Shown: positions 42,030 to 57,960, counted from the first letter of the whole stretch. The stretch: 62,729 nucleotides of DNA, filler included, from Callorhinchus milii (GCF_018977255.1; 4 parts of 4 records of this genome joined end to end with filler, not necessarily neighbours in it), one strand, 5' to 3'. A program made the numbers and translations. The notes: generated by a model not told the origin, from the sequence alone.

Positions 42030-42309
42030 CAGCCGCCGTATCTAACCGGGAAAACCGGCCAGGCCCTGAGACTGACCTGTGAATCCAGCGGGTTTAATCT
42101 CAGCATAGCACACATGTCCTGGTACCGGCAGCTTCCCGGGAAGCAGCAGGAAAATCTGCTCCAGTATGAAGGCTCATCCATCAAGTCATTCGGGTCCGGG
42201 TTTGAAAACCGTGTCATTGTCATCAGAGAAGATTCCCAAAGCATCTTCGATCTGATCATCAAATGCCCGACAGTGCACGACACCTCCACCTATTACTGTG
42301 AAATTAAGA
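42030..42309 (+). CDS. IGHV: Atypical VH exon (cluster E); 5' end and leader lost in the gap
   Basis: QPPYLTGKTGQALRLTCESSGFNLSIAHMSWYRQLPGKQQENLLQYEGSSIKSFGSGFENRVIVIREDSQSIFDLIIKCPTVHDTSTYYCEIK, open frame, canonical Cys/Trp/Cys present. Confidence 0.9.
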
Positions 42310-42348
42310 CACAGTGAGAGGAAACGGGGCTGAACTCCTACAAATACA
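42310..42348 (+). other. 23-RSS of VH-E
   Basis: CACAGTG + 23 + ACAAATACA, identical over 39 bp to 19873-19911. Confidence 0.9.
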
Positions 42349-42758
42349 CAAGGGCAGGAAAGGCAGCCCCTCCCACCCTAAACTGACTGAGGGCAAACAT
42401 GGTGTCAATGCTGTTTTGGGCCAAAATTTAAAGGAAAAGCTGAAGTTGCATTTACTATCAGACTGAACCCACACATTGAATCGGTGTTGATTGGGGCGCA
42501 AGACCTGGTTATCTGTGCTGTAATATTCTGTGATTTCAGACGGTCAGTGACACTGTGCTGTTGAGGCGGGAAGAACTGCGATTGGAGACTGATTACATGA
42601 CGGTTTAAAAACATCACCAAGTCACAAGCTGTTGGAAATAATTACATTCTGTTTCTGTGGATGTGAGGAAACTATGAGACAGATTCTGCGTCACGTCAGA
42701 GGAGAATAGTCACTTTCAGTGAATTTCGGCAGCCGATATTGTGCAGATATTGGGGATC

Positions 42759-42835
42759 AGTATTTGTATTGGGCTGTATCACTGTGTAAAGACAAGACAC
42801 AATGCTGCATTCAACCACCTCCTCATACAAAAACT
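42759..42835 (+). other. Diversity segment D1 (42787-42797, taaagacaaga), 12-RSS 5' and 22-RSS 3'
   Basis: agtatttgt-12-cactgtg | D | cacaatg-22-acaaaaact; the 12/22 D1 pattern matches shark IgM clusters. Confidence 0.88.
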
Positions 42836-43147
42836 CCTGCCACAGAGACTGCTGACTCCATTCATCATACAACATCCACAGCACCGATGTAAACGGCCCT
42901 GAAAATGGATAATTCTCAGAAATAACCTGCTGTTTAACAGACAAATTCCGGTTAATTTTGATTACAGGATGTTACTCAACGAGATTTACGTCTGTGGATC
43001 TGCTCGGACATTAAACGAAATTCTCTGGAAAACATAAGAATTTATTCTGACCGAAACATCTCAGGAGCCATCAAAGTATTCTCTGAACTGAGGTCCAGCA
43101 GTTGCCAGAAATTCAGGTTCAATATATGTTAGTTCATCCTGTGCAGG

Positions 43148-43213
43148 AGTTTTTGTCATGTTGTGTATCACTGTGACAAACGCCGCACGGCATTAACAGT
43201 CAATACAAAAACC
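43148..43213 (+). other. Diversity segment D2 (43176-43185, acaaacgccg), 12/12 RSS
   Basis: agtttttgt-12-cactgtg | D | cacggca-12-acaaaaacc. Confidence 0.88.
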
Positions 43214-43548
43214 CCTCAACACCAAACCAGCTAATCTCTTTCACTGCTCGCTTGTGTGGGTCCCACTGAATATTTGAGGAATTGGCATTTATAAAATGGT
43301 GTCTATTGTTGAGGATTTTATTACGATAATAGACACAACTCATTATATTTGTTCTTCAATCTGTTCTTGGCAAGAAAATGTGTTTGAGGTGAGCACTGCG
43401 AACTGGCAGAAAAGCAAATCATTCAACAGGTAAACACAGAGACAAGCAATTGTTTTCAGAACATTACAGAATTATATTGTGCGCTTCATTTGGTTTGGGG
43501 AAGCCAACATTTACTAATATTGTATTTGTGTGCCTTGCCCGCACCGTG

Positions 43549-43625
43549 GGTTGTTGCAGTGGGCAGCACACTGACTGCAGCACAGTGACAAAAGTACCAC
43601 GGCATTAACTATCAATGCAAAAACC
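43549..43625 (+). other. Diversity segment D3 (43588-43597, acaaaagtac), 23-RSS 5' and 12-RSS 3'
   Basis: ggttgttgc-23-cacagtg | D | cacggca-12-gcaaaaacc; 5' RSS nearly identical to the J RSS, 3' RSS nearly identical to that of D2. Confidence 0.8.
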
Positions 43626-44001
43626 CTCCAACCCCAAACCAGCTACTCTCTCGCTCTGTTCGCTTTTGTGTGTCCCACTGAATATGCGGAGCATTGGTGT
43701 TCGTAAAATGGTGCCGACCGCTGAGCAAATTGCCCGATTTAATAGATATAAAATATTACATTTCACCTTCAATCTGTTGGTGACAATAAAACGTGTTTGA
43801 CATGAACACTGCAAACTGGCAAAGATACAAACACTTAACAGGTAAACACGGAGCCAAGCGATTGTTTTCAGAACATTACAGAAATATATTGGGTATTGTA
43901 TTTGGTTTGGGAGAGCCAATATTTACAGTAATGTTGTGTTTGTGTGTCCTGCCCGCACAGCAGGTTGTTGCAGTGGGCAGCACACTGACTGTAGCACAGT
44001 G

Positions 44002-44040
44002 ACTACAAGGGTCAAGGCACCGTGTTGACTGTGACGGATG
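44002..44040 (+). CDS. IGHJ: JH segment (YKGQGTVLTVTD), 23-RSS at 43963-44001
   Basis: ggttgttgc-23-cacagtg, GQG-T-x-L-T-V-T motif, phase-1 donor g|gtaaga; Trp of WGxG replaced by Lys (aag 44007-44009). Confidence 0.88.
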
Positions 44041-46220
44041 GTAAGAAGCTGATCCTATCTCACTCACTTGTCTGAATTGTCTCTGTGTATATTTGTTTTG
44101 TTCACTTTAACACCTTTTTAATGTAATGATCTCTGCATGGACGGGCTACCTCACCCTTTGATACACGCTAAAGATTTTTAGCTGTCATTGCTTTCCACAC
44201 AACTCTTCTTTATGTATTATTCTCTAAATGTTTAGTTTATTGTTTGTGATATTTTTAGTGATTTGTGAATATCCAGCTGAAATTATAGTGATGGACATTC
44301 TGCAATGTTTGTTCGCGGTGACTGGCGACTGCTGTTTTTCGGGGATAATGTCGCCGGCAATTGTATAAAAGTGTTTCAAACTATGCCCAAATTTTGGAAA
44401 TCAGGACCCGAATGTCGCAGGATGAGTGACGGTAAGGTTATCTAATCGATTCCCACATGTATTTCAATCCGTTGTTTAATATAAGGAGCGTGGCTGAGGG
44501 TTAAAGATGTTCATCTGGGAGGAGGTGAGTGTGAGAGTAAAGCGGGTTGACACTGCTGGGATGTGACTGACAATGCCTCAACTCAAATCTGCACGAATGT
44601 TACAGAAATATTAGTGAATATTTTTATTTTAAGTAATAATACCATGAACGTGTTGCTCACAGTTTCTTTTCCTCAGCTGCCCATGCACCAGCCACGATAA
44701 TATGCAGCTCCTCTTTGATCTCATGCTTCATTTTAATTGATATTGCCAGCGGTTGGTTTAAACTGACTTCGATTCCTCACAGTGTACAGAGGTCGGTGTT
44801 GATCTACAATCATCAGCTTCCTGCTTTACACTAACTATCTTGCAGAAAAAACACAGATTTATTCATCAAACATATGTTCAAGTTTCAAGAGCAGACTGCA
44901 TTGTGAGGGATCCAGTTATTAATGACATGTATAACAAAAATCGAAACTGGTCACTGACATCAAACTAATGATATCATAGTTGATCATCACAAACTTCAGA
45001 CTTGGCAAAGATGAGGGTGAAAGGAAGACATTTCTCATTTTACTGTAATCACATGCTTTAGTTATTCTGTGTAACTGTTCATCTGCAAATATGAGTTTCC
45101 TGTTTTACATGAACTGATCAGCAGAAAAATTGCTAAAATTGTTGTTTTTCAGTAAACAAATGGTAAACTCTGAATAAGACGCTGCAATGAATCAGATACA
45201 TTTGTTTATGAGATGATTAACACACAGCGGTATTGATCACTGACATGAAGCTAATGATACCAGAACTGACCAGCTAAACTCCAGACTCAGCAGAGATGAT
45301 GGTGAAAGGAATTAGTTTCTGATTCGACTGTAAATACATGATTTGGTTATTCTGTGTAACTGTTTGAGCTGCAGGGAATTGTGACCGTGAGTTACTTTGC
45401 ACAATGTACAATGCATCGTGTGTGATGTGGATGGAGAGTGTGTGAGCTGCTGTGCGGTTACTGACAGCTTCAGGCTGAGGGAAAGTGAACATGGAGTAAC
45501 CTGTGGGTTACTGGATGGAAACACTGTGTGTTTGAGATGTGAGGGTTCAGGCTGTGACTGTGTGTGAGAACGGCGTTGAACAGTGTAATAGCAAACGGCT
45601 GAACCCGGACATCTCACTGTGGGGAGAGCGGTTGGGAGCTCGGTTCATGCTTAACCCTCAGATCGAGTAGTAGGAAAGAGCAAAGTGAAGGTTTGTTTTA
45701 TAAATATCTTCCCAGAGGCCGAGACATGCAAAGATGCTTTGTTTGTGAGGAGTCCGAGTTTTGGTAATGTGCAAAATCCCGCAGATTTGTAAATATTTGT
45801 TAAATTCAGATTGATTTCTAAAAAGAGGTTTCCCGAATTCTTAAGTAGAACTGGAATCCAAATTTAAAGTAAGTTTTACATTATTAGAAACTTCCGCGCC
45901 ATCTTAAAGTAAAGACATAATGATCTCCAAGTGTTTATTATCAGTTGAGGATTCGGATCTCAGAAGTGAATAATGTCTCTATTTGTATAATCAGTTAATT
46001 TTATTTATTGATAGCTTACAACTCGGTGACAGCAGGGGCTGGAAACAGACCCACAGACACCAGCACTGCTTGTTTTATATATTTATATCACCTGCCTCTG
46101 TCTGTCAGCCTGTGTGGCATGAATGCAGCGTGACCACAGGACATTTAACTGTCACCACATGAATCTAACACAATTCAGGGTAATACAGACTGTGAAGCAA
46201 AGCAGAATGTTATCCATTCT

Positions 46221-46605
46221 GTGGAGTCCTGCAGCTCCGGGTTCAGAGCACTCGCCTCGCAAGAGAGACAACCTGTGTTTGATTCCCGGGTAGTGTGAAA
46301 TGTCAGGAAGGTCTCCTTACTCCACACTTACAACAACAATTCGGTTTGCCTTACAGTAAGTAGCAACAAACCTGTTAGTCAATCAACAGATTGCTTCCCC
46401 GGAGGTATTAGTCTCTTCAATATATTAAAAATAAATGTGTCACTGAATGCACGACTGTTTGCGGAAAACTGCTGTACGCATTCGGATGCCGCATTTCGCC
46501 CACAAAAATACAGTGAATTCAATTTAGAGTGTATTCTTTGAAGCACTTTGAGACGTCTCGAAGACGTGATATGTCGCTATACCAAATGCAAGGAATATTC
46601 TATTT
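46221..46605 (+). mobile_element. Degraded full-length SINE in the J-C intron (second SINE 3' piece at ~46880-47010)
   Basis: Head gtggagtcctgcagctcc, core and tail. Confidence 0.75.
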
Positions 46606-47860
46606 ATTGTTTCAAATGTGAATGTAATATTGCTTTGCCCGATAGGCATGCAGCGTCACTGACATCAAACGCCGGACAGCGGCTTCTGCCTTTATTTCAC
46701 CATTTCACAGCTGATTGCGACAAAAATAACCATAGATATGTTGGGTATTTCCGTGTCCTGGGCACAACACTGATTGCAGTCCTTCATTCCTCATGTAAAC
46801 ACTGAACCTAACCATTTTAATCGTTCTCTAGTTTTGTAGATTACAAAATTAAGAGGGATCAAAATTCTTCAACAGTCAATCAAATATTTTTCGCACAGAC
46901 AATATACACTGATTTCACTTCACATTGTTTTCTGTGAAGCGCATTGAAATATCTCAAAGACTTGATAAGACGCTATTTCCAATGCAAGTGATATTATTCT
47001 TATCAATATTTAATGTACTATTTTAACAACACACATCGGCTGTCTGGTGGCCATTGACTGTGTCGATTCTGTCATCAATCTGAGCAGAGTAACTTGTTTT
47101 AATACATATCAGAGCCACAAAGAAATATGTTTGAAATCTTCTGACGATTGCATCAAAATTTAAGATTACCCAAATGTCTTAGTAACCTTGAAACAAAAAT
47201 ATTTTAGGAAATGAAACAGACGATTAGGAAATTGATGCAACAGTTTAGTTTCAGCGGCTTTTCTAAAAACTGCATACATACATACATACATACATACACA
47301 CATGAACACACACACATACAAACAGAGAACCTGCTTGGCCTGACAATGCTACCTTCATTTGTGTAGTGCCCCTTTTTGGTGTTTCAATGAAAGCAATACA
47401 CATGCGAGCTTTGACCCCAAGTTTATTGAACTGAGCAACATGAAGAAATCGGGCCGCAATCTACAGCCTTTTATCCGCAGAGCTATACCACACACTTCCT
47501 CAACAATTACTTCCACTTTGTTTCCTGGACACAAAGAGTGAATTTGGGTTAATCCGAGAAGGTATACAGTTAAACGCACAGTTACAAGTCATCCAATACA
47601 CGTGTTTATTCCTGAGTGGTATTCAGTCAGATGGAATTGAAACTCAACAGGTGCAATATCACGCAGTCCTTCAGGAAGTCTTGTTCAGTATTCCAGTAAA
47701 TTATTCCAACACCAAATGATGAGCATATTCGGAATCAGCAATCTGTGTTCAGCTCACCCACAATGTGAGAATATTCATGGACAGTATTGTTTAACTGACC
47801 GAATATGAAATCCTGGATATTGGTTGTTAATCCAGTTTCATGTATGTTTTCCTTTTCTAG

Positions 47861-48172
47861 AATGTGAGCAACCCACTGGGGGTGTGAAGGTCTCTTTCCT
47901 GCCACCCTCGCAGCAACAGGTTTTAATGGAGTCCACTGTAACGCTGACATGTGTCGTGGCCAATGCACCACTTGACGTCAACGTGACTTGGACACAAGGA
48001 AAGACACATTTACAGTCTGGATATGGGAAACCGTCTGCCACTGAGCCTCAGGAAGTGATCAGTAAATTAAACGTTTCTACACAGGACTGGAAGAGTGGGA
48101 AAGAATTCTTCTGCCTTGCCAATCATGAAGATATTCCAACTCCCATCGGAGAAAAGACATTTAAGAGGAAAG
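47861..48172 (+). CDS. IGHM: IgM Cmu3 exon (cluster E), intact
   Basis: ttttctag acceptor, ECEQPTGG...VTLTCVV...W...FCLANH...KRK, g|gtgagt donor, 312 bp. Confidence 0.88.
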
Positions 48173-48662
48173 GTGAGTAGCCATATTTCAGGAAATAAAT
48201 GATTTATTTGTTTATTGTAATTTCAGATTTCAGTCAACAGAAACAACTGGGAATACAATGATCAGCTCTCTGTTTGCTTCTTTTTCTGTTTGTCTTTCGA
48301 TAGATTTATAACCTCTCACAAAGGTCGGACAACAATTTATAGATAAAACTTGTTAAGTACATTCACTCACATGAATTATATCAACAAGAATCTAACCATC
48401 ATCTGGAGGATGTTTACACATGTTCTCAGGGAGCAGAGTTACCATATCTGAACCGCTGGTCACTGGGTGCATATAATAAAGTCCTGTCGGGGATTTCAAC
48501 CCACACCAATGTTCCTAGTCACACAAACAATTACAAACCACTGAGCACAGATTGAACAGAGACACAAACATTATTCTCAGCTTGTTCTGCAAGATCTGAT
48601 GCTTCAAAATATTCTATGATTGACACCATCATTGTATTGATCTGATTGCATTCTTCCCACAG

Positions 48663-49054
48663 TTATGTACACAAAACAACCTTCAGTGTATCTGCTCCTC
48701 CCCTCGGCAGAAGAAATGGCTGCTCAGCAGTTTGTCACCTTGACCTGCCTGGTGAAGGACTTCGCTCCCAAAGAGATCTTTGTGCAGTGGACTGTGAATG
48801 ACCAGTTGATTGATGCCAACAAGTACAGAAACACCGAGGTGATGGCAGACAGTGAAGATCTCAACTACTCCATGTACAGCATGTTAACCCTCTCAGTCGA
48901 TGAGTGGAACAGAAGACCCTCATACTCATGTGTGGTGGGCCACGAAACGTTCCCACTGAAGACCCTGACCAGAACCGTAAATAAATCCAGCGGTAAACCG
49001 AGTTTTGTAAACCTTGCACTTGTCCTGATGGACACCGTGAATCCGTGTCACTGA
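48663..49054 (+). CDS. IGHM: IgM Cmu4 plus secretory tail (cluster E), intact; membrane donor G|GTAAAC at 48993
   Basis: QPSVYLLLPSAEE...YSCVVGHE...SSGKPSFVNLALVLMDTVNPCH*; AATAAA at 49137-49142. Confidence 0.92.
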
Positions 49055-51100
49055 GTGTCTCTCAATACCATCTTGCTTGTCCTTTTGTGCACCCACCTTC
49101 TTGCCATTGCATTGTCAGTTTTCAACAATTAAATCAAATAAAGATCATTGTTTTATTGATGTATCAGGTACTTCGGATTGAATTAAAATTAATTACACAG
49201 ATATTTTCCAGCGTGAGGACTGATCCATTTTTTTTGGAAGCAATGCCAATATCAAGTTATTACCGCAGTCATTTTGGTGGTTACAATTAAGCGTGATGAT
49301 ATGTTTCCACATGTGTCATACACCGGGCTGACCACCACCCCACCCCAGACCCCTACGACTCCACCACCCACACACAACCCCCGAAAATATAAGTTGACAA
49401 TAAAGTCCCACTAATTCAACATCACTGGTTATAATCCAATCTCAAAACGAATTTTATTTGCAGTTTGTTTTATAATTGCACAGCACAGCTACACCTTTTC
49501 CCTTGCAGGATATTTTCTCTATCACTGAAAAGCATCGCATTCTACACGAAACAACATCTCAGATGTAAACTATGGCCTTTTTTGGTAAATTACCTATAAC
49601 AATGATACTTGTTCCACAGAAAAGATTTGGATAAGGTTACATATTCACTTGAACACTCGCTTAGCCACGCTTCTACATTGTAAATAAATACACTCATTCA
49701 CAATCTGCACACACGCTCAATCCACCCAAGTCCACATTTGCACTCATACACACAGACATTCGCACACTCATTCACTACCATGTCTACCCAGGCCCACACA
49801 AACTCACACACAACACTTCCACCCAGTCCCCACGCACTTAACTACATTCACACCAACCCAGGCCCTCACACACTTGATGGCCCTCAGGGATGAACCCTGT
49901 TCACTTATACCTCAATCTGTTTAGTTGATTTACACAAATGTTTTTGCTGGTTGTTCTATTGCTTTACAACAATATCAGCCATTTCGAAATAGAAATGGTG
50001 CCATTTATAAAAACGTTGATGATGAAAGAGTAGGGGACGCTGACAAATTCAGGAATAACCTGGGGAATTGCGTAATGTAACAGACATTTTAACTGAGTTT
50101 CCAGAGAGGTGGAAATGTAGTTCAATGTTGAGACACCAGTTTGTTGAAGTGTATTTATAGTAAAATAATCACTGCAGGAATAGCAGCAAAATAATTCTGT
50201 TATAAGTGGAATGGCAAAAAACTTGGAAACACGTCGATTGGAAAACGTATCGGAAGATCACTGAAACAGATTCTGTGATTTTCGCAAAGTTAATCGACTG
50301 TCAATGACATTTCAAGTTAACGGGATTGTGAGTGGATCACTACATGTGGTTCTGGACAATTTATCACACAAAGGACATAAGAGCTGCTGAGAGGGTTTTG
50401 GGCAGTTACACAAAGACCATGAAAATAATGCCTGTGATTGGCGCTGCAGCGAACAGCTACAAATATTGTTGCTGTACTTCTAAAAACACAAAGTAAAAGA
50501 AAAATTGAAGAGAGTCGTACCAAAGCATTTAAATCCATGAAGTCTTCAAAGACTGAAGCAACGAAAGAGGATTGTATCCATACAAACGGGATAAAACATG
50601 CAGGAAAGCCACTGTAACATATGAAGGATTAGTCAGTTCCTAAATTCAGATTTTTTAGAATATATTATGCTTTATCTCTAAACCATTATGTGAAGAAATT
50701 TAAAATGGAATTTGGACAGTCACTGTGTGAACGTACAATATAGGCAGAAAGGAGGAATTGGATGATTGGGGACGATATGTCCATTTTCTAACAGCGGAAT
50801 CTCAATGGTAGTATTTCCATCCTTCTGTTATTCCACGAATTTTAATTTCCCAAAATGTTCCCCCAGTTCTTTTTTGGATTCATTAGTTGTGAGCAAGAAA
50901 AAATAAAACCAAGATTCCTTTACTTCTGTTAAAACTAAACATTTAGAAAGAATTGATCGAAGGGAACGTGCAGTTTATTAAAGTGAGGGAGCCCGTGATC
51001 AACTGGGAAAATGCATAAAATTAACAAAAATTCGTTGAAAGCAGAAAGGCCTCAGGTTTGAATCCCATCTAAAGATATTTCCTTTTTTTTATCCTAACAG

Positions 51101-51231
51101 ATTTCCCAAACGAGATGATGCTGAAAGGTTTTCAAGAAGTACCAAGTGACAACCTGTGGCCTACTGCTTCCACCTTCATCATCCTCTTCTTCCTGAGTAT
51201 TATGTACAGCGCAGCCGTCACTCTAATTAAG
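51101..51231 (+). CDS. IGHM: IgM TM1 exon (cluster E), intact
   Basis: [44 protein letters not shown]|gt; phase matches the Cmu4 internal donor. Confidence 0.88.
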
Positions 51232-51795
51232 GTGATGAGAATAAATTATTTGACGCCATGATATGATGTAGCAGCTGATGTTGAATATTTGTTCCATAGG
51301 AACCCTCATTGTCATTCTCATTGCCACCACTTTGCTGAGAACTTTCCCTCTCTTTTTAGGCCAAGTTCCTTGTTACTGGGCTGTGTGAAGGTGATGAGAA
51401 TATCCTCTCCATTACAAACCCTATCGCACCTGAGATATGCTCACCTGGTATAGACTAGGCAAGGGCTAATGGTTCTTTACAGATTATGTACCTCTGTCTG
51501 TACATTGTGGACAATTTAAAGCATCATGAAATCGTTCTGTCTGCCACAGTTCCCAGCAAGCAACTAAAAATTAAAAGACAATCAGTTGGATTCGTGTATG
51601 TGTGACTGTGTGTGTGTGTGTTTGTTTATTTGTATTTGTTTTTGTGTATTTATTCTTGTTAGTGTGTTAGTGTCTGTGTTGATATATATATAAATATATA
51701 TATATATATACATATAGAACATTAAACATATGCCTGAACATGAATTCTCTATCTCGGCTGAAATCATTCATTATATATTTGCTTTTATTTTCCAG

Positions 51796-51804
51796 ATAAA
51801 TTGA
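51796..51804 (+). CDS. IGHM: IgM TM2 exon (IN*), cluster E; polyA signal at 52189-52194
   Basis: ttttattttccag|ATA AAT TGA at the position homologous to VK*/IK*. Confidence 0.72.
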   Translation: MN

Positions 51805-54800
51805 GTTTCTTCAGATCATATTCATCGATGTGTCTCGTCCGTCTGTGTTTAACAACGGTGTCTTGAGACTGATTATGTGCTGTCTTTTTTCCCCCATTAT
51901 AGAAATCAGCTGAAAATAAACAATGTGTTGTGCAACTATGTGAATTTTAGTACCTTTTCTTATCTTTAGTTTATTTTACAATATGCCTTTTGGAAACAAT
52001 AACTAATAATGTTACCATCACGGCTCTCTGATAGTCTTCATTTGCTGTTTAATTTTTTTGTGATGTAACGATACCGAAAGACAGTGACTGAGGTATCTAT
52101 GCTTTGATATTAATTTGATGCTCTATATATGTATTCACTCCTGTTTCTTAATGTCTGCAGATTCTCTATATTGTTACCGTGATATATCAATAAAGATGTG
52201 ACGGCTGATTGAGCTGTTTGATATTTTTATTTCCTGTTCCTTTTGTGTCAATTTTGCCTTTGCTCCTGATTTCCAAATTCGACAGATTCCAGTAAGTCAG
52301 CATTAAACAAAAGCTGTTAAATGTAATGTCCTACTTCAGATATAGCTTTGCTATAAAATTGTTCCACTTGAGTTATTCTTTGCTCCAGTGACCAGCAGCT
52401 GCTTCCGTCCCCAATGATCTGCCCCACACCCAGATACAGCTTCAGACACGTGGCTATTCTAATAGAATAACATGCATTTATGTGTTAGAGTATTTATGGA
52501 ACAATGCGCGTGTTCAATCTGTTTTATGCATTGACATAGTTTTATCTCCTGCCTCTGCTGAGCTGCACAATTTGAACCGAGCAGCTTCATGGGAAAAAAA
52601 TAAGTTGACAGATCAATAACAAAATACTCACAATTGCACAGTAAGGAGGAAATTCCCTGCACAAAAGTACATTTGTTCTGACCATTCTGTGACAACTTCT
52701 GCCGTTTGTTTCATCTACATTAGTATTCACGTATCTTACATGTAAATAATTTTCCAGCTCTATCAAAACATACATCATTTTTTTTGTACCATGTGCTGTT
52801 TTGACCTCTCGTCATCCAACCTCTGCATTTCCAGCCAACCCTATTAATGATTTGGGGATTAACCGTGCAGAAATGTGGTGCAATATTGACCTTGATTATC
52901 CTGCTAACTAAAAAGCACATTCCTTACTGTATCCTGTGTTCACTACGTTTAACATCCTCAGTTATATCTGCTTTCAACCTGATCTGATCCAATCCAACAG
53001 CTTAGTTGGAACATAAGAATGGTGTTACAATATAAGACCAGAGCCCGTCCAGTTCACCTTCCACTATCCTCATAGTGAAATTCACTTGTCATGGCCCCAA
53101 ATCTTTACCGTCCCCCAAGTTATAATTTCCTGAATTAGGTCTATCCCACATGCTTTTGAAATCATCTACAATTTCTGCGTTCACCGTCTCCAGAGCAATC
53201 CTGTTCTATACATTTACTGTCCTCCAAGATTATTTCCTGAAACAAATCTATCTTGTTTGCTTTTGAAAGAATCAAACCTTTCTGCTTTCACCGTCTCCGG
53301 AAGAATCCTGTTCCATACATTTATTGCTCACTCACTGAAATAGTGTGTACAGAGCTTTGCTTTGACGTTTAATTGCAGGAAATGTCCTCTGTTTTGACCA
53401 AAACACTGTAGGCCTCTTACCATTACCGTACTTGTGAATGATCCCTGTAGGTAAGGAATCACACTTGTATAAATCTTGACACTTTTATGCAGAATTTTTT
53501 GTATCCAGCAATTGGAAGTTGTTAATTACTGCCAAAATAAAGTCAGTATTGTGTTTGTACTGATTTCAAAGACTTGCCAAATTCTGCAAATTTCAAAATG
53601 TTACATGAATAAAGTATATTTAGACTCTGGTGGAATTCAGCCCATGAACACTTTCCATATCAAGTAGAATCGTCCTGTCCAAAACAATCCTTCATTTACT
53701 TCACAATTTTTCCATTCAGCTATCAATCCAAGGATGTTTGCGTCTTGCAATGGAAATATAGGAAGGAAATTATTCTGCAACAAGAGAAGGATGTTCATTT
53801 CTATAATCTTAAAGCAGCACAGACCATGCCATGCTATGGCCTGAGAAAGCAAATAGGATGTTGTGCAACATGCTTAACCAGTTGAGGCTCAAATCCTCGG
53901 AAAACGTCATGAAGCTGCACAGACATTGTTCAGACTGATTGTCCAAATGAAAGAGCCTGGACAAGATACTGCACAGAGAACAGCGAGGCTTATTTCCTCA
54001 GTGAGGTTGATGTTCTATGAGGAACAATTAATAAACTGGAGCGTATATTCATATGAAATTGTAATATATGATGATGTATGTATGTGAGTGTGTGTGTTTG
54101 TGTCCAAGAGAGAGAGGTAGAGAAAAAGAGAAATAGGGGGAGAGAGTGAAGGGAGAGAGAAATAAAGAGAGAAAGGGATAGAGAGGGAAGGAGGCTGGTT
54201 GGGGAATAATTTGCACTAAACAAAGCTGCAGGAATCAGGACTCTATTTAGGGGACAGTTTAATAGCAATATTTTTTTCAGGAAACAAGCAACATTGGAAA
54301 CTCTTGTTGCAGGAATGGAATTTATCTGCAAGTGCATGTAATGTCTGGCCAGTTTCCTATGTCCTGACCAATTAGAATTATCCTGTCAGTTATTGCTTTG
54401 GCCTACAGTGTTAGCATGACCCAAATTAAACACATTTCAAATGCCACCTTAAACAGTTTGCCACTCTGGTCCTTCGAATGAGGCAGTCAGGTTGACTGGT
54501 TTGTCAACAACACGGCGTGAAATATTAAGGACTCACTTGGCTCAGGAACACAATGATCGAGATCACTACAAAGGCTTTGTTCAATTCCCATATTTTATGC
54601 CAAGTGTCCCACCCTGGAATCAGTTAAGCTCCAGTGAGACCCGTTTCCTCCTCTCACCCCTTCCCCTCCGCACCGCACACCACTTCTGGCCACAATAACC
54701 AAAGGCAGAATAGAATACAACGAATATATCCACAATGTATAAACTTGAGTAAAATCAAATTTAACAATCGCTCAGGTTTGGAGGTAACTAACTTTAATGA

Positions 54801-56274
54801 ACACTTTACTGAATCCATCAAGCAACATTTGAAGAAAAACATGACATTGGTCACGTGATGTTCTGAGAGTGAATCAGTTTCTTATCTGCAGGAAACACCT
54901 GCACTTTCTCAAACTAAATTAGAGCAGCTTCATCTCAATATAAACCTAACCTTAAACCAGCTGCCAGAAACTAGTTAAAAATATTACAAAAAACAACACA
55001 GTGTCTTTTCCATACACGCCTCATGCCAGTGGAAATCAAATAATTCTATCAGAAATTGTTCTGCAGGGGATATAAAGCTGTTGAACTTTATTTGTATCTG
55101 TTGGAGAATACTTCACAAGACAGCTTTAATATTGTCTGGCAGCAAATTAATGACAAATGCGTATCTTACAAAGCTTAACATCTTCCAGAAAGTGAATGTT
55201 TGGAAAGACATTCCTTGATTATTTAATGTTTATATAATTATAACCTCTCCACGCAAACTTTATATTTCAGAAGGAAAAAAAAGTTCGAAACCTACTGTTG
55301 ACTAGCGTACAATAATTCGCACCACAAAGAATAACAATATACAGAAGGTATTATGGCAGCATTAATTATCGAAAATTAATAGCTAAACAAGGAACGTGTG
55401 TGAACGTGTTAGTTTCTTTCAGTGAGTGAAACAGAAACGCTCCAATGATCTTTGGACATGTGTTTTAGGGAATATTATTTTGAAATCAATAGTATATAGG
55501 AAATATTGTAACTTTCATGTCTTAGGAAGTTGACGTAAGATGTTTTTTATTCTGTCTGTCCGAATGCTGATGTTAACCTGCAGTGTGTCCATTAATTAGG
55601 ATCATTTCGCTCAATCCCCACCTTGAGACTTTGAACGCAGAGTGTACCATTAAACATATGCAGTAACCTGGCTCTGTTGTCTGCACTCTGGCCTGTCAGT
55701 CAGAAGGCCGTGGGTTCAAGCCCCATGTCTGCATGTGAAACTGATGAATTCCAGGCCGACACTGTAATACAGTGCAGGGGGTGAACTACATTGTTGGAGA
55801 TTTTCTCTCACTTCTTATTTACTTTATAGATGTCCCATACCCCTGTTTTCATAAAGAGAGAATAGCTCAAACTAATCGGACAAAAATCACCACTGTACAC
55901 GTTAACATTAAATTACTAATAAAAATAATCCTTGCATTCGATACAACGTGTTAAATTCGTCTGTAAGTGCTTCAGACAATATAATGTGAAGTAAATTGAC
56001 TTTTGAATTTGTGGGAGAATGTGGCGGTCAATTGCACCCAGCAATGTTCCACCAAAAGACAAGCAGTGGAATGACCAATTTCTTCTTATTAATATTACTT
56101 TATATTGCACCATAATAATATCAGCATTTCAGACGCCGTTTTTTCGTGCTTTTGAGCATTCTCAGAGTAGGATTGTGGCCAGGACAAGGGAGAACCTCCC
56201 GTTTTAGTTCACATAGTGCCCTGAATTCTTTAACCTCCATTTACACAGACAGACAAACCTCGGTTTAATATCCC

Positions 56275-56915
56275 ACCGGAAAGATTGCAGCCTCACTATG
56301 CGGCACCACCCGAGCACTGTGTTGCATTATCAGCCGGGACTACATGAGATCAAAATGTCAATGTTGACACACAATCTCTTGTCAGAGGCGAAACTATTGC
56401 CATGTGAAACAGACTGATAAACATTTCGTGGCTGCGTTTCATTCACCTGCATCATGCAGTCACTAAACTCTGCAGTAAATCATTTTAAGCGATTAAGATA
56501 TCTTCAAGCCAGGAAATACGCTGTATAAAATGTAAAAATTATTATACTCGATTTGGCGACGCTGTGTATTAAATAATATATATAATAATAATAATTATTA
56601 TTATTACCGGAAAGATTGCAGCCTCACTATGCGGCACCACCCGAGCACTGTGTTGCATTATCAGCCGGGACTTCATGAGTCAAAATGTCAATGTGGACAC
56701 ACAATCTCTTGTCAGAGGCGAAACTATTGCCATGTGAAACAGACTGATAAACATTTCATGGCTGCGTTTCATTCACCTGCATCATACAGTCACTAAACTC
56801 TGCAGTAAATCATTTTAAGCGATTAAGATATCTTCAAGCCAGAAAATACGCTGTATAAAATGTAAAGATCACTATACACGATATGGCGAAGCTGTGTATT
56901 AAATAATATATACAG
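56275..56915. repeat. Recent 331-bp tandem duplication
   Basis: accggaaagattgcagcctcac starts at 56275 and 56606; very few differences. Confidence 0.9.
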
Positions 56916-57639
56916 TAATAATAATCCTTTCGTATAGCGCTTTTCACGTCATCTCGACGTCTCAAATAGTCTGTGAAGTGAATTGACAGGATACTAGAGG
57001 GCGAAATGCGCAGCCAATTGCGCACAGCAGTGTCCAGCAAACAGTCGTGGTTTGAAGAGAACAACTATATCTTGTTTTATTTTGCAGAGGGAATATTATC
57101 AGGCGTGTGGTGTAAGGAAACTTACCCCCACGACACCCACCCCGCAAAAAGTATTCAAACTGAAACTGAATAACCAACATCAGTTGAAACAACAGTTGAG
57201 AGCAATAATACAGTGTCTATCAGTCCATTGATTATAGAAAATAAGACGTTTGGAGTAAAAAAGTGACAATTTGCTCCATTGAATGTCTGCTGGCTACTTG
57301 AAGGACAATCCTTTTCAGCCAATATACTTGCCCTACATTTGATGCCCTTTCAGATATGTCTCTGGATATCTTGTGAAAATGTATATGGTTGTGTCACAAA
57401 CATTACTCCTGTCAGGCATTCCACAGCGAAATATCTAAGTTAAGGCCTTTAGTCAATGATTTGAACGATCGTGAAAATAGTTTATCTATATTAAAAACTC
57501 TCGATCTCTATCAAGCTGCCCGCCCACGTCATACGCCCCCCACCCAACCACCCGCCCACCAATAATTCAGACGATTTTTACAAGACCATACCTTATTCTT
57601 TACTTATCAGATATCCCGTCACTCCCAGATTATCTGTTT

Positions 57640-57940
57640 ATTATTTGTAGAGCGCTCACTTCTCAAGGAAGCCTTGTGGGTTCGATTCCCGGCAGGGCGA
57701 AACTTTGGACAAGTTTCCCGACTCCACGAATCTAACATTAATCCCTCAAGAGAAAAGTAAGAATAATAAATAGGTCATTTCAAACGAGAACTGTGTTTGA
57801 CACACTGCAATAGACTGCCTCCATTTGCCCACAAACGTACAGCTTAATTTATATCGTAGAATACTTTGTGAAGCACTTTGTGACATCCAGAAGATGTGAA
57901 AAGCACCATATAATATACATGGATTATTAATATTAATTAT
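57640..57940 (+). mobile_element. Degraded full-length SINE
   Basis: B box ggttcgattccc, degraded core and tail. Confidence 0.65.
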
Positions 57941-57960
57941 TATTTTAATGTGGAAACGTT

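What the first reader, a model, noticed from the sequence alone, without database searches (positions are those of the whole stretch)
43176..44001. Birth of a third D segment by tandem duplication of the D2-J interval (chimeric 23/12 D)
Seen: 43176-43587 and 43588-44001 are diverged tandem copies (periods 412 and 414 bp, roughly 80-85% alike by eye). The junction places the J-type 23-RSS in front of a D2-like core with the D2-type 12-RSS, with microhomology cac[t/a]gtgac. The result obeys the 12/23 rule: V23-12D1-22, 12D2-12, 23D3-12, 23J, so D3 is optional but usable. Known: typical shark IgM clusters have two D, IgNAR has three. Inference: a convergent route to longer and more diverse CDR3 in a single-domain receptor, with the mechanism still readable in the DNA.
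Basis: partly seen in the sequence, partly recalled or inferred. Interest (0 to 1): 0.75.

Follow-up and report, generated by a model that had tools for sequence, protein, structure and literature searches.

The report
Duplicated third D segment, chimaera antibody
In an elephant-shark gene cluster for a light-chain-free, IgM-derived antibody, an old 412-bp tandem duplication whose ends sit exactly on recombination signals has made an extra, optional D segment with mirror-image signals; this probably lengthens the binding loop, though its use was not tested here and the antibody class is already published.

Summary
43176-43587 and 43588-44001 are tandem copies, 325 of 411 aligned bases identical (79.1%, K2P 0.25, z = 36 against shuffles).

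The piece is one Callorhinchus milii cluster-type Ig heavy-chain gene: V, D1, D2, D3, J, two IgM-like C exons (Cmu3- and Cmu4-like with tailpiece) and two TM exons. There is no CH1 or CH2 exon, and the V carries VHH-like changes at the light-chain interface. It therefore belongs to the published holocephalan IgM-type heavy-chain-only antibodies.

This fuses a copy of the J 23-RSS exactly to a copy of the D2 core plus its 12-RSS.

By the 12/23 rule D3 can be reached only from D2 and is optional. It would add about 10 nt to CDR3.

The copies are 21% diverged, so this is not a haplotype artefact and not a recent birth. Close paralogous clusters should share it.

D3 use in transcripts could not be tested. 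Whether RAG (a trans hybrid joint) or microhomology-based unequal exchange made the duplication is unresolved. The key 2022 paper on these genes could not be read, so prior description of D3 is likely but unverified.

The parts
42030..42309 (+). V exon, cut at the piece edge (leader and first residues missing). VH-type V-set domain with VHH-like FR2 (WYRQLPGKQQENLL).
   Evidence: Translation. Pfam V-set, E = 2e-12. Best PDB matches are VH3-type VH and VHH domains. The last 81 residues are identical to C. milii A0A4W3GHW0.
42310..42348 (+). V 23-RSS: CACAGTG, 23-nt spacer, ACAAATACA
42759..42835 (+). D1 with 5' 12-RSS (42759-42786), core TAAAGACAAGA (42787-42797) and 3' 22-RSS (42798-42835)
43148..43213 (+). 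D2 with 5' 12-RSS (43148-43175), core ACAAACGCCG (43176-43185) and 3' 12-RSS CACGGCA-12-ACAAAAACC (43186-43213)
43176..43587 (+). Duplication copy A (412 bp): D2 core, D2 3' 12-RSS, intervening DNA and a J-type 23-RSS
43549..43625 (+). D3 with 5' 23-RSS GGTTGTTGC-23-CACAGTG (43549-43587), core ACAAAAGTAC (43588-43597) and 3' 12-RSS CACGGCA-12-GCAAAAACC (43598-43625)
   Evidence: The 23-RSS is 38/39 identical to the J RSS and the 12-RSS is 25/28 identical to the D2 3' RSS.
43588..44001 (+). Duplication copy B (414 bp): D3 core, D3 3' 12-RSS, intervening DNA and the J 23-RSS
43963..44040 (+). J 23-RSS (43963-44001) and J coding (44002-44040, YKGQGTVLTVTD), followed by a GT donor
47861..48172 (+). 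First C exon, Cmu3-like, beginning ECEQPTGG
   Evidence: Pfam C1-set. Aligns to human mu constant residues 221 onward. 97% identical to C. milii A0A4W3GLZ0.
48663..49054 (+). Second C exon, Cmu4-like, with secretory tailpiece ...GKPSFVNLALVLMDTVNPCH and stop codon. Cryptic G|GTAAA donor after 48992 for the membrane form.
51101..51231 (+). TM1 exon (predicted by eye): ...[27 protein letters not shown]
   Evidence: Sequence read; splice strings located
51796..51804 (+). TM2 micro-exon (predicted): ATA AAT TGA

Best explanation
The piece is one cluster-type heavy-chain gene of the elephant shark's IgM-derived heavy-chain-only antibody: V, D1, D2, D3, J, Cmu3-like exon, Cmu4-like exon, TM exons.

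Origin. An ancestral V-D1-D2-J cluster with the usual shark RSS pattern (23 | 12/22 | 12/12 | 23) underwent an unequal exchange. The two breakpoints lay at the heptamer/coding borders of the D2 5' RSS and the J RSS, which share CAC[T/A]GTGAC. The result is a 412-bp tandem duplication of [D2 core, D2 3' 12-RSS, spacer DNA, J 23-RSS]. The junction is a new D segment, D3, carrying the J-type 23-RSS on its 5' side and the D2-type 12-RSS on its 3' side. This part is shown by the sequence.

Agent of the exchange (inferred). It was either microhomology-based unequal exchange or slippage, which I weakly favour at about 55%, or a RAG-made hybrid joint in trans between sister chromatids or homologues in a germ cell, at about 40%.

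How it works (inferred from the 12/23 rule). The D3 5' 23-RSS can pair only with the D2 3' 12-RSS. The D3 3' 12-RSS pairs with the J 23-RSS. D2 can still join J directly and delete D3. The cluster can therefore make V-D1-D2-J or V-D1-D2-D3-J, and also the versions that skip D1. D3 would never occur without D2. It adds up to 10 nt, about 3 codons, of hydrophilic sequence (TKV, QKY or KS in the three frames) plus one more junction. This lengthens and diversifies the CDR3 of a V domain that has no light chain.
For: - Duplication: 79.1% identity over 411 bp, z = 36, spacing 412-414.
- Boundaries confined to the 9-bp heptamer+2 string, with non-homologous flanks (6/21 and 5/20 matches).
- Eight RSS with the stated spacers and orientations.
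- The D3 5' RSS differs from the J RSS at 1 of 39 positions. The D3 3' RSS has the same heptamer as the D2 3' RSS and a nonamer matching the consensus at 8/9. If D2 and J work, D3 should too.
- RSS columns are better conserved than the rest: 63/67 against 256/334, Fisher p = 7e-4. Under a stricter model in which only the D3 copies drift, the 23-RSS gives p = 0.03 and all RSS columns give p = 0.06.
- D3 has no stop codon in any forward frame.
- Locus identity: V-set and C1-set domains, VH-type V, Cmu3-Cmu4-tailpiece match, no Ig exon in the 3.8-kb J-C intron, C. milii proteins 97-100% identical.
- Germline RAG activity and a documented germline hybrid joint that swapped RSS in a shark IgH cluster (PMC2193153, PMC2193156).
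Against: - No rearranged sequence was available, so D3 use is unproven.
- The 3' heptamer of D3, shared with D2, is weak: CACGGCA, 4/7 to consensus.
- An untrimmed V-D1-D2-D3-J join is out of frame, whereas V-D1-D2-J is in frame. Junctional trimming makes this a weak point.
- RSS conservation is only borderline under the strict model and could reflect gene conversion. The 31-bp identical run in the 23-RSS has p of about 0.06 by my estimate.
- Nothing in the sequence separates the RAG route from the microhomology route.
Confidence: 0.72

Rival explanations
1. The duplication is real, but D3 is a passenger. It is rarely or never incorporated, or is mostly deleted by direct D2-J joining, and does not shape the repertoire.
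For: The 3' heptamer CACGGCA is weak. No expression data could be obtained. Conservation of the D3 12-RSS alone does not differ from one-lineage drift (3 mismatches in 28, p = 0.51).
Against: The D3 23-RSS has kept 38/39 identity to the J RSS while neighbouring DNA fell to 77% (p = 0.03 under the strict model). The same weak heptamer serves D2, which every product of the cluster needs. The unit has been retained over K of about 0.29.
Confidence: 0.18
2. The cluster had three D segments from the start, for example by shared ancestry with three-D IgNAR clusters. On this view the similarity of the two intervals is due to later gene conversion rather than to a duplication that created D3.
For: Three-D clusters exist in cartilaginous fish (PMC5192425, PMC8692893). 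The RSS blocks are more alike than the rest of the unit.
Against: Homology runs through the whole 412-bp unit at a fairly even 55-90% per window, and ends exactly at the heptamer borders. The D1 unit shows no comparable similarity (z = 2.8). V and C are VH/IgM-type and not NAR/IgW-type. A 23/12 D is exactly what the duplication predicts.
Confidence: 0.05
3. Assembly artefact: two haplotypes or two paralogous clusters were stitched in tandem.
For: None beyond the general risk in repeated Ig loci.
Against: The copies differ at 21% of sites with four indel columns, far above allelic divergence. The junction joins the end of one unit to the start of the next with only 9 bp in common, which overlap-based assembly would not create. 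The piece contains no N.
Confidence: 0.02

Closest known systems
Holocephalan IgM-derived heavy-chain-only antibody genes: ratfish COS5 (Rast et al. 1998) and ratfish/elephant-fish HCAb genes (Anumukonda et al. 2022, Eur J Immunol 52:247). Cited in PMC3149040, PMC2150980, PMC11659936 and PMC12227049.
   Same: Chimaera species, cluster-type gene, IgM-type constant region without CH1, and a VH with hydrophilic changes at the light-chain interface. [quoted passage not shown]
   Different: COS5, as described in PMC3149040, lost CH1 and duplicated CH2. This cluster has only the Cmu3- and Cmu4-like exons. I could not read the 2022 paper, so I do not know whether D3, its 23/12 RSS or its origin by duplication are described there.
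Standard shark/skate IgM heavy-chain cluster V-D1-D2-J-C
   Same: About 400-bp spacing between segments and the RSS pattern V-23, 12-D1-22, 12-D2-12, 23-J. The pattern is recalled from horned-shark work; the cluster layout is given in PMC2193153 and PMC1845163.
   Different: This cluster has an extra D3 with 5' 23-RSS and 3' 12-RSS between D2 and J, A-rich hydrophilic D cores, and no CH1 or CH2.
IgNAR clusters (one V, three D, one J, up to four rearrangements)
   Same: A light-chain-free antibody whose CDR3 is built from three D segments (PMC5192425, PMC4279169, PMC8692893).
   Different: The V type (NAR/TCR-like) and C type (IgW-like, five domains) are unrelated. Elephant shark lacks IgNAR (PMC4279169). 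The resemblance is therefore convergent and not by descent.
Germline RAG products in cartilaginous-fish Ig clusters: germline-joined genes, and the horned-shark cluster whose D1-D2 intervening DNA was inverted by a hybrid joint that swapped 12- and 23-RSS
   Same: An RSS is found attached to another segment's coding end, exactly at the heptamer border, in the germline (PMC2193153, PMC2193156).
   Different: The known case is an inversion in cis. This one would need a hybrid joint in trans to give a tandem duplication, and it has a RAG-free alternative.
Camelid VHH heavy-chain antibodies
   Same: VH-derived single domain with changes at positions 37, 44, 45 and 47, no CH1 in the protein, and a longer CDR3.
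   Different: Camelids skip CH1 by a splice-site mutation in IgG genes of a translocon locus. Long CDR3 there does not come from an added germline D with its own RSS arrangement.

Membership tests
Cartilaginous-fish cluster-type IgH gene | One V, several D and one J within about 2 kb, followed by one set of C exons | tested here: met
   V ends at 42309; D1 42787, D2 43176, D3 43588, J 44002; C exons at 47861 and 48663; TM exons at 51101 and 51796
Cartilaginous-fish cluster-type IgH gene | RSS with CAC heptamers, A-rich nonamers and 12- or 22/23-bp spacers, allowing ordered joining | tested here: met
   Eight RSS in the correct orientation; 16 hits against 3.5 expected in shuffles
Holocephalan IgM-type heavy-chain-only antibody | IgM-type constant region with secretory tailpiece | tested here: met
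   Residues 8-234 of the C region align to human mu 221-453, E = 3e-50; the tailpiece ends NPCH
Holocephalan IgM-type heavy-chain-only antibody | No CH1 exon | tested here: met
   No open frame of 45 aa or more in the J-C intron looks like an Ig domain by eye, and the eight longest (58-91 aa) give no Pfam Ig hit. The piece contains no N.
Holocephalan IgM-type heavy-chain-only antibody | VH-type V with hydrophilic substitutions at the VL interface | tested here: met
   Alignment to VH3 domains shows WYRQ..KQQENL against WVRQ..KGLEWV. J has KGQG in place of WGQG.
Holocephalan IgM-type heavy-chain-only antibody | Comes from a chimaera | tested here: met
   C. milii UniProt entries are 97-100% identical to the V and C regions
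Holocephalan IgM-type heavy-chain-only antibody | Protein secreted without light chains | not testable with these tools
   Needs serum or cell biochemistry
Functional D gene segment (for D3) | Short coding core flanked on both sides by RSS that are 12/23-compatible with its neighbours | tested here: met
   23-RSS | 10 bp | 12-RSS. The partners are the D2 3' 12-RSS and the J 23-RSS.
Functional D gene segment (for D3) | Found in rearranged, expressed CDR3s | not testable with these tools
   No rearranged C. milii sequence of this family in the protein databases searched, and no contigs on record
IgNAR | NAR-type V and IgW-like five-domain C region | tested here: not met
   V matches VH domains and C matches Cmu3-Cmu4; only two C exons
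Germline RAG hybrid-joint product | Complete RSS heptamer fused to the intact coding end of a 12/23-compatible partner | tested here: inconclusive
   The junction CACAGTG|ACAAA fits, and the D2 5' 12-RSS and J 23-RSS are compatible. The same junction follows from exchange within the 9-bp microhomology. There are no P or N nucleotides to tell the two apart.

The most novel reading that the evidence does not exclude
D3 is a fossil of RAG acting in the germline in trans. RAG cut at the D2 5' 12-RSS on one chromatid and at the J 23-RSS on the other, and a hybrid joint fused the J signal end to the D2 coding end. On this reading the recombinase built a new D segment with mirror-image (23/12) signals in one step. 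That would be a direct example of RAG-driven birth of D segments, as proposed by Lewis and Wu (PMC2193153), in a light-chain-free antibody that then benefited from a longer CDR3.
Probability: 0.3. Interest if true: 0.7.

Novelty: new member of a known kind. Interest (0 to 1): 0.42.

Why it matters
If D3 is used, two unrelated light-chain-free antibodies of cartilaginous fish, IgNAR and the chimaera IgM-type HCAb, have each arrived at a three-D cluster. That would support the idea that single-domain binding sites need more CDR3 length and diversity.

The duplication also shows how RSS themselves can serve as breakpoints that create new gene segments and new spacer arrangements. This holds whether the route was RAG or plain microhomology.

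In practice it gives exact D3 and RSS coordinates, and it gives clear predictions for repertoire analysis of chimaera single-domain antibodies: D3 never without D2, and a two-mode CDR3 length distribution.

Tried and rejected
- Tandem Repeats Finder at default parameters did not report the 412-bp repeat, because it is too diverged. MAFFT and the repeat finder did.
- Looked for rearranged or paralogous sequences. Two large protein searches returned only Ensembl/UniProt C. milii gene models and no cDNA with a CDR3. Exact-protein contig look-ups for the window's C exon, P0033 and P0020 found nothing. So neither D3 usage nor clusters with or without D3 could be examined.
- P0020 and P0021 looked like a germline-joined VDJ (…CQIKTHDYVGRG…). 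They are explained instead by a gene model that splices the V heptamer (CA|GTGAGA) to the J heptamer (CACAG|TG). The same sites in this window give …EIKTHDYKGQG.
- The key paper (Anumukonda et al. 2022) is not in the library under its PMC id, DOI or PMID. Ten literature searches gave only secondary mentions.
- An earlier D1-to-D2 duplication is not detectable (z = 2.8). Only the RSS resemble each other (families D9 and D11).
- Haplotype or assembly artefact was rejected on 21% divergence and the non-homologous junction.
- A hidden CH1 or CH2 exon was rejected.
- Rfam and tRNA scans of the piece were empty.
- No information-content RSS model was available. I used consensus matching with shuffles instead.

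Full report
**1. What the piece is**

Positions 42030-57960 contain no N and hold one cluster-type immunoglobulin heavy-chain gene on the + strand.
- The V exon is cut by the piece edge. It translates to QPPYLTGKTGQALRLTCESSGFNLSIAHMSWYRQLPGKQQENLLQY…TYYCEIKT and is a V-set domain.
- Its best solved relatives are human VH3 and camelid VHH domains, not NAR or TCR V domains.
- In those alignments the light-chain-interface positions read Y37, Q44, Q45 and N47, where VH has V, G, L and W.
- The J segment reads YKGQGTVLTVTD, with K where VH has the conserved W.

Downstream of J there are only two constant exons, 47861-48172 and 48663-49054.
- Together they align to human mu residues 221-453, that is Cmu3, Cmu4 and the tailpiece (E = 3e-50).
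- The second exon ends in a secretory tail, …GKPSFVNLALVLMDTVNPCH.
- It contains the usual internal G|GTAAA donor for the membrane exons, which I place at 51101-51231 and 51796-51804.
- None of the open frames of 45 aa or more in the 3.8-kb J-C intron looks like an Ig domain by eye, and the eight longest (58-91 aa) give no Pfam Ig hit. There is therefore no CH1 or CH2 exon.

The species is Callorhinchus milii.
- The last 81 residues of V are identical to A0A4W3GHW0.
- The C region is 97% identical to A0A4W3GLZ0.
- Other C. milii V entries are 98%, about 92% and 78% identical, so this is a small gene family.

**2. What is already known**
- A chimaera IgM cluster that lost CH1 (ratfish COS5) was long ago proposed to encode a light-chain-free dimer (PMC3149040, PMC2150980).
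- 'Holocephalin IgM HCAbs' are now cited as a fact (PMC11659936).
[quoted passage not shown] 74 of PMC12227049). The library does not hold it.
- Elephant shark has about ten IgM genes and no IgNAR (PMC4279169).

The receptor class is therefore known. Whether its D segments have been described in the way reported here, I could not check.

**3. The observation**

The two intervals 43176-43587 and 43588-44001 are tandem copies.
- They are 325/411 identical (79.1%), with four gap columns, 53 transitions, 33 transversions and K2P 0.25.
- The alignment score is 36 standard deviations above shuffles.
- Tandem Repeats Finder missed the repeat because of the divergence. The repeat finder found five collinear blocks with spacing 412-414.

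The unit cannot be re-phased by more than a few bases.
- To the left of copy A, the spacer and nonamer of the D2 5' RSS match the corresponding bases before D3 at only 6/21.
- To the right of copy B, J coding matches the D3 core and beyond at 5/20.
- The only shared string is CAC[T/A]GTGAC.

**4. The recombination signals**

A consensus scan finds all eight expected RSS, in the right order and orientation within 1.7 kb. It required CAC, at least 4/7 heptamer matches, at least 7/9 nonamer matches and spacers of 11-13 or 22-24 nt. It gives 16 hits in the piece against 3.5 +/- 2.1 in shuffles.

| Segment | 5' RSS | Core | 3' RSS |
|---|---|---|---|
| V | – | – | 23 |
| D1 | 12 | TAAAGACAAGA | 22 |
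| D2 | 12 | ACAAACGCCG | 12 |
| D3 | 23 | ACAAAAGTAC | 12 |
| J | 23 | – | – |

- The D3 5' RSS (GGTTGTTGC-23-CACAGTG) differs from the J RSS at one spacer base.
- The D3 3' RSS (CACGGCA-12-GCAAAAACC) shares the D2 3' heptamer, including its weakness (4/7 to consensus).
- It differs from the D2 3' RSS by one nonamer base and two spacer bases.

**5. What happened**

The simplest history starts from a normal shark-type V-D1-D2-J cluster.
- The block [D2 core, D2 3' 12-RSS, about 335 bp of intervening DNA, J 23-RSS] was duplicated in tandem.
- The breakpoints lay at the heptamer/coding borders of the D2 5' RSS and the J RSS.
- The junction automatically puts a J-type 23-RSS in front of a D2-type core and 12-RSS.
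- The first five bases of the D2 and D3 cores are still the same (ACAAA), so the junction shows no loss or addition.

The D1 unit has no comparable similarity to the D2 unit (z = 2.8). This is therefore a specific D2-J event and not a general periodicity of the cluster.

**6. Which mechanism**

Two routes give the same product.

(a) Exchange or slippage within the 8/9-bp microhomology.

(b) RAG cleavage at the D2 5' 12-RSS and the J 23-RSS on different chromatids, followed by a hybrid joint of the J signal end to the D2 coding end.
- This pair of RSS obeys the 12/23 rule.
- The two RSS point the same way. In cis this would delete D2 and circularise exactly the new junction. In trans it gives the duplication.
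- Germline RAG activity is well documented in cartilaginous fish. A germline hybrid joint that swapped 12- and 23-RSS in a horned-shark IgH cluster is regarded as near certain (PMC2193153, PMC2193156).

The D3 heptamer carries the J-type A at position 4. The exchange point therefore lies in GTGAC or at the heptamer border, which fits both routes. I found nothing in the sequence that separates them. I weakly favour the RAG-free route (about 55:40) because trans hybrid joints should be rare.

**7. Age**
- Outside the RSS and the core, the copies are 76.6% identical (K2P 0.29).
- With assumed neutral rates of 0.5-2e-9 per site per year this means roughly 70-290 My. The rates are my assumption, so this is inference.
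- The divergence rules out a haplotype artefact.
- It also means the event is much older than the split of the 96-98% identical paralogous V and C genes seen in UniProt. Those clusters should carry D3 too.
- 'Birth' is thus right as a description of origin, but it was not recent and is probably not private to this cluster.

**8. Does D3 work?**

This is inference only.

By the 12/23 rule:
- The D3 5' 23-RSS can join only the D2 3' 12-RSS. V-23 and D1-22 are excluded.
- The D3 3' 12-RSS joins the J 23-RSS.
- D2 can still join J directly.

The allowed products are therefore V-(D1)-D2-J and V-(D1)-D2-D3-J.

If the three possible first events (D2-D3, D3-J, D2-J) were equally likely, D3 would be kept in about two thirds of cases. 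This is a rough guess.

Other properties of D3:
- It is open in all three forward frames (TKV, QKY, KS).
- Like D1 and D2, it encodes hydrophilic, often basic residues.
- Untrimmed, the stretch between the Cys codon and the J lysine codon (AAG, at the position of the usual VH Trp103) grows from 36 to 46 nt.

Evidence for constraint:
- RSS columns are 63/67 identical against 256/334 elsewhere (Fisher p = 7e-4).
- The J RSS and the D2 3' RSS are constrained anyway. The fair null therefore lets only the D3 copies drift.
- Under that null the 23-RSS gives p = 0.03, the 12-RSS gives p = 0.51 and both together give p = 0.06.
- This is suggestive, not decisive, and gene conversion would look the same.

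**9. What could not be done**
- No rearranged C. milii sequence and no second cluster could be retrieved with the tools.
- The 2022 paper could not be read.

**10. Verdict**
- The structural interpretation is well supported: D3 was made by tandem duplication of the D2-to-J-RSS interval, with chimeric 23/12 signals.
- The functional claim is plausible and fits the title of the published work on these genes, but it is untested here.
- The setting, a chimaera IgM-type heavy-chain-only antibody cluster, is already known.
- A careful published analysis of these clusters probably lists their D segments, so I rate novelty modestly.
- The most interesting open reading is that RAG itself made the duplication.

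Noticed in passing
43521-43548 (counterpart 43935-43962): An extra 12-RSS-like element in 5' orientation (TGTATTTGT-12-CACCGTG) directly abuts the nonamer of the D3 23-RSS. The copy in front of J has CACAGCA and lacks the CAC on the cutting side. It scores as well as some real RSS, but the scan threshold gives about 3.5 chance hits per 16 kb.
   Followed up: partly
42313/42314 (V heptamer), 43999/44000 (J heptamer), 43585/43586 (D3 heptamer): The RSS heptamers double as splice-like sites: CA|GTGAGA as donor and CACAG|TG as acceptor. UniProt C. milii models A0A4W3GAN3 and A0A4W3GC99 (…CQIKTHDYVGRG…) look like exactly this V-to-J splice in a paralogue. The same splice in this window gives …EIKTHDYKGQG. 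It could be an annotation artefact or a real sterile transcript.
   Followed up: partly
48993-49054: The secretory tailpiece reads SFVNLALVLMDTVNPCH. N-L-A is not an N-glycosylation sequon. C. milii paralogues with an additional C domain have N-I-S at this place. The penultimate Cys is kept.
   Followed up: no
47861-47870: The first C exon starts ECEQPTGG. The Cys right after J is a candidate inter-chain disulphide in a molecule that has no CH1 or CH2.
   Followed up: no
43416-43475 and 43829-43887: This is the best-conserved non-RSS block of the duplicated unit (about 87% against 77% background). It contains the strings CAG|GTAAAC and TTGTTTTCAG|, which resemble splice sites. The conservation is not clearly above chance.
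   Followed up: no
56275-56925: A 330-bp tandem duplication at 95% identity in the intergenic DNA after the TM exons. It is much younger than the D2/D3 duplication.
   Followed up: no
44797-45364 and 53122-53326: Further diverged tandem pairs: a roughly 280-bp pair in the J-C intron (74-82% identical) and a 107-bp pair (78% identical). The locus seems prone to small tandem duplications.
   Followed up: no
46450-46600, 46930-46990, 56930-57050, 57860-57920: Dispersed repeat copies sharing a GAAGC.CTTTG.GAC…GTGA…GC.CTATA… core, some of them inverted relative to each other (I2 and I4). Nearby are tRNA-tail-like strings (GGTTCGATTCCCGG at about 57680). They are probably SINE fragments. There are no Rfam or tRNA hits.
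   Followed up: partly
P0035 (C. milii A0A4W3GAQ7), not in the window: A second V family, 78% identical, with an even more VHH-like FR2 (WFRQLPGKQREKLL). The species therefore has at least two single-domain-type V families.
   Followed up: no
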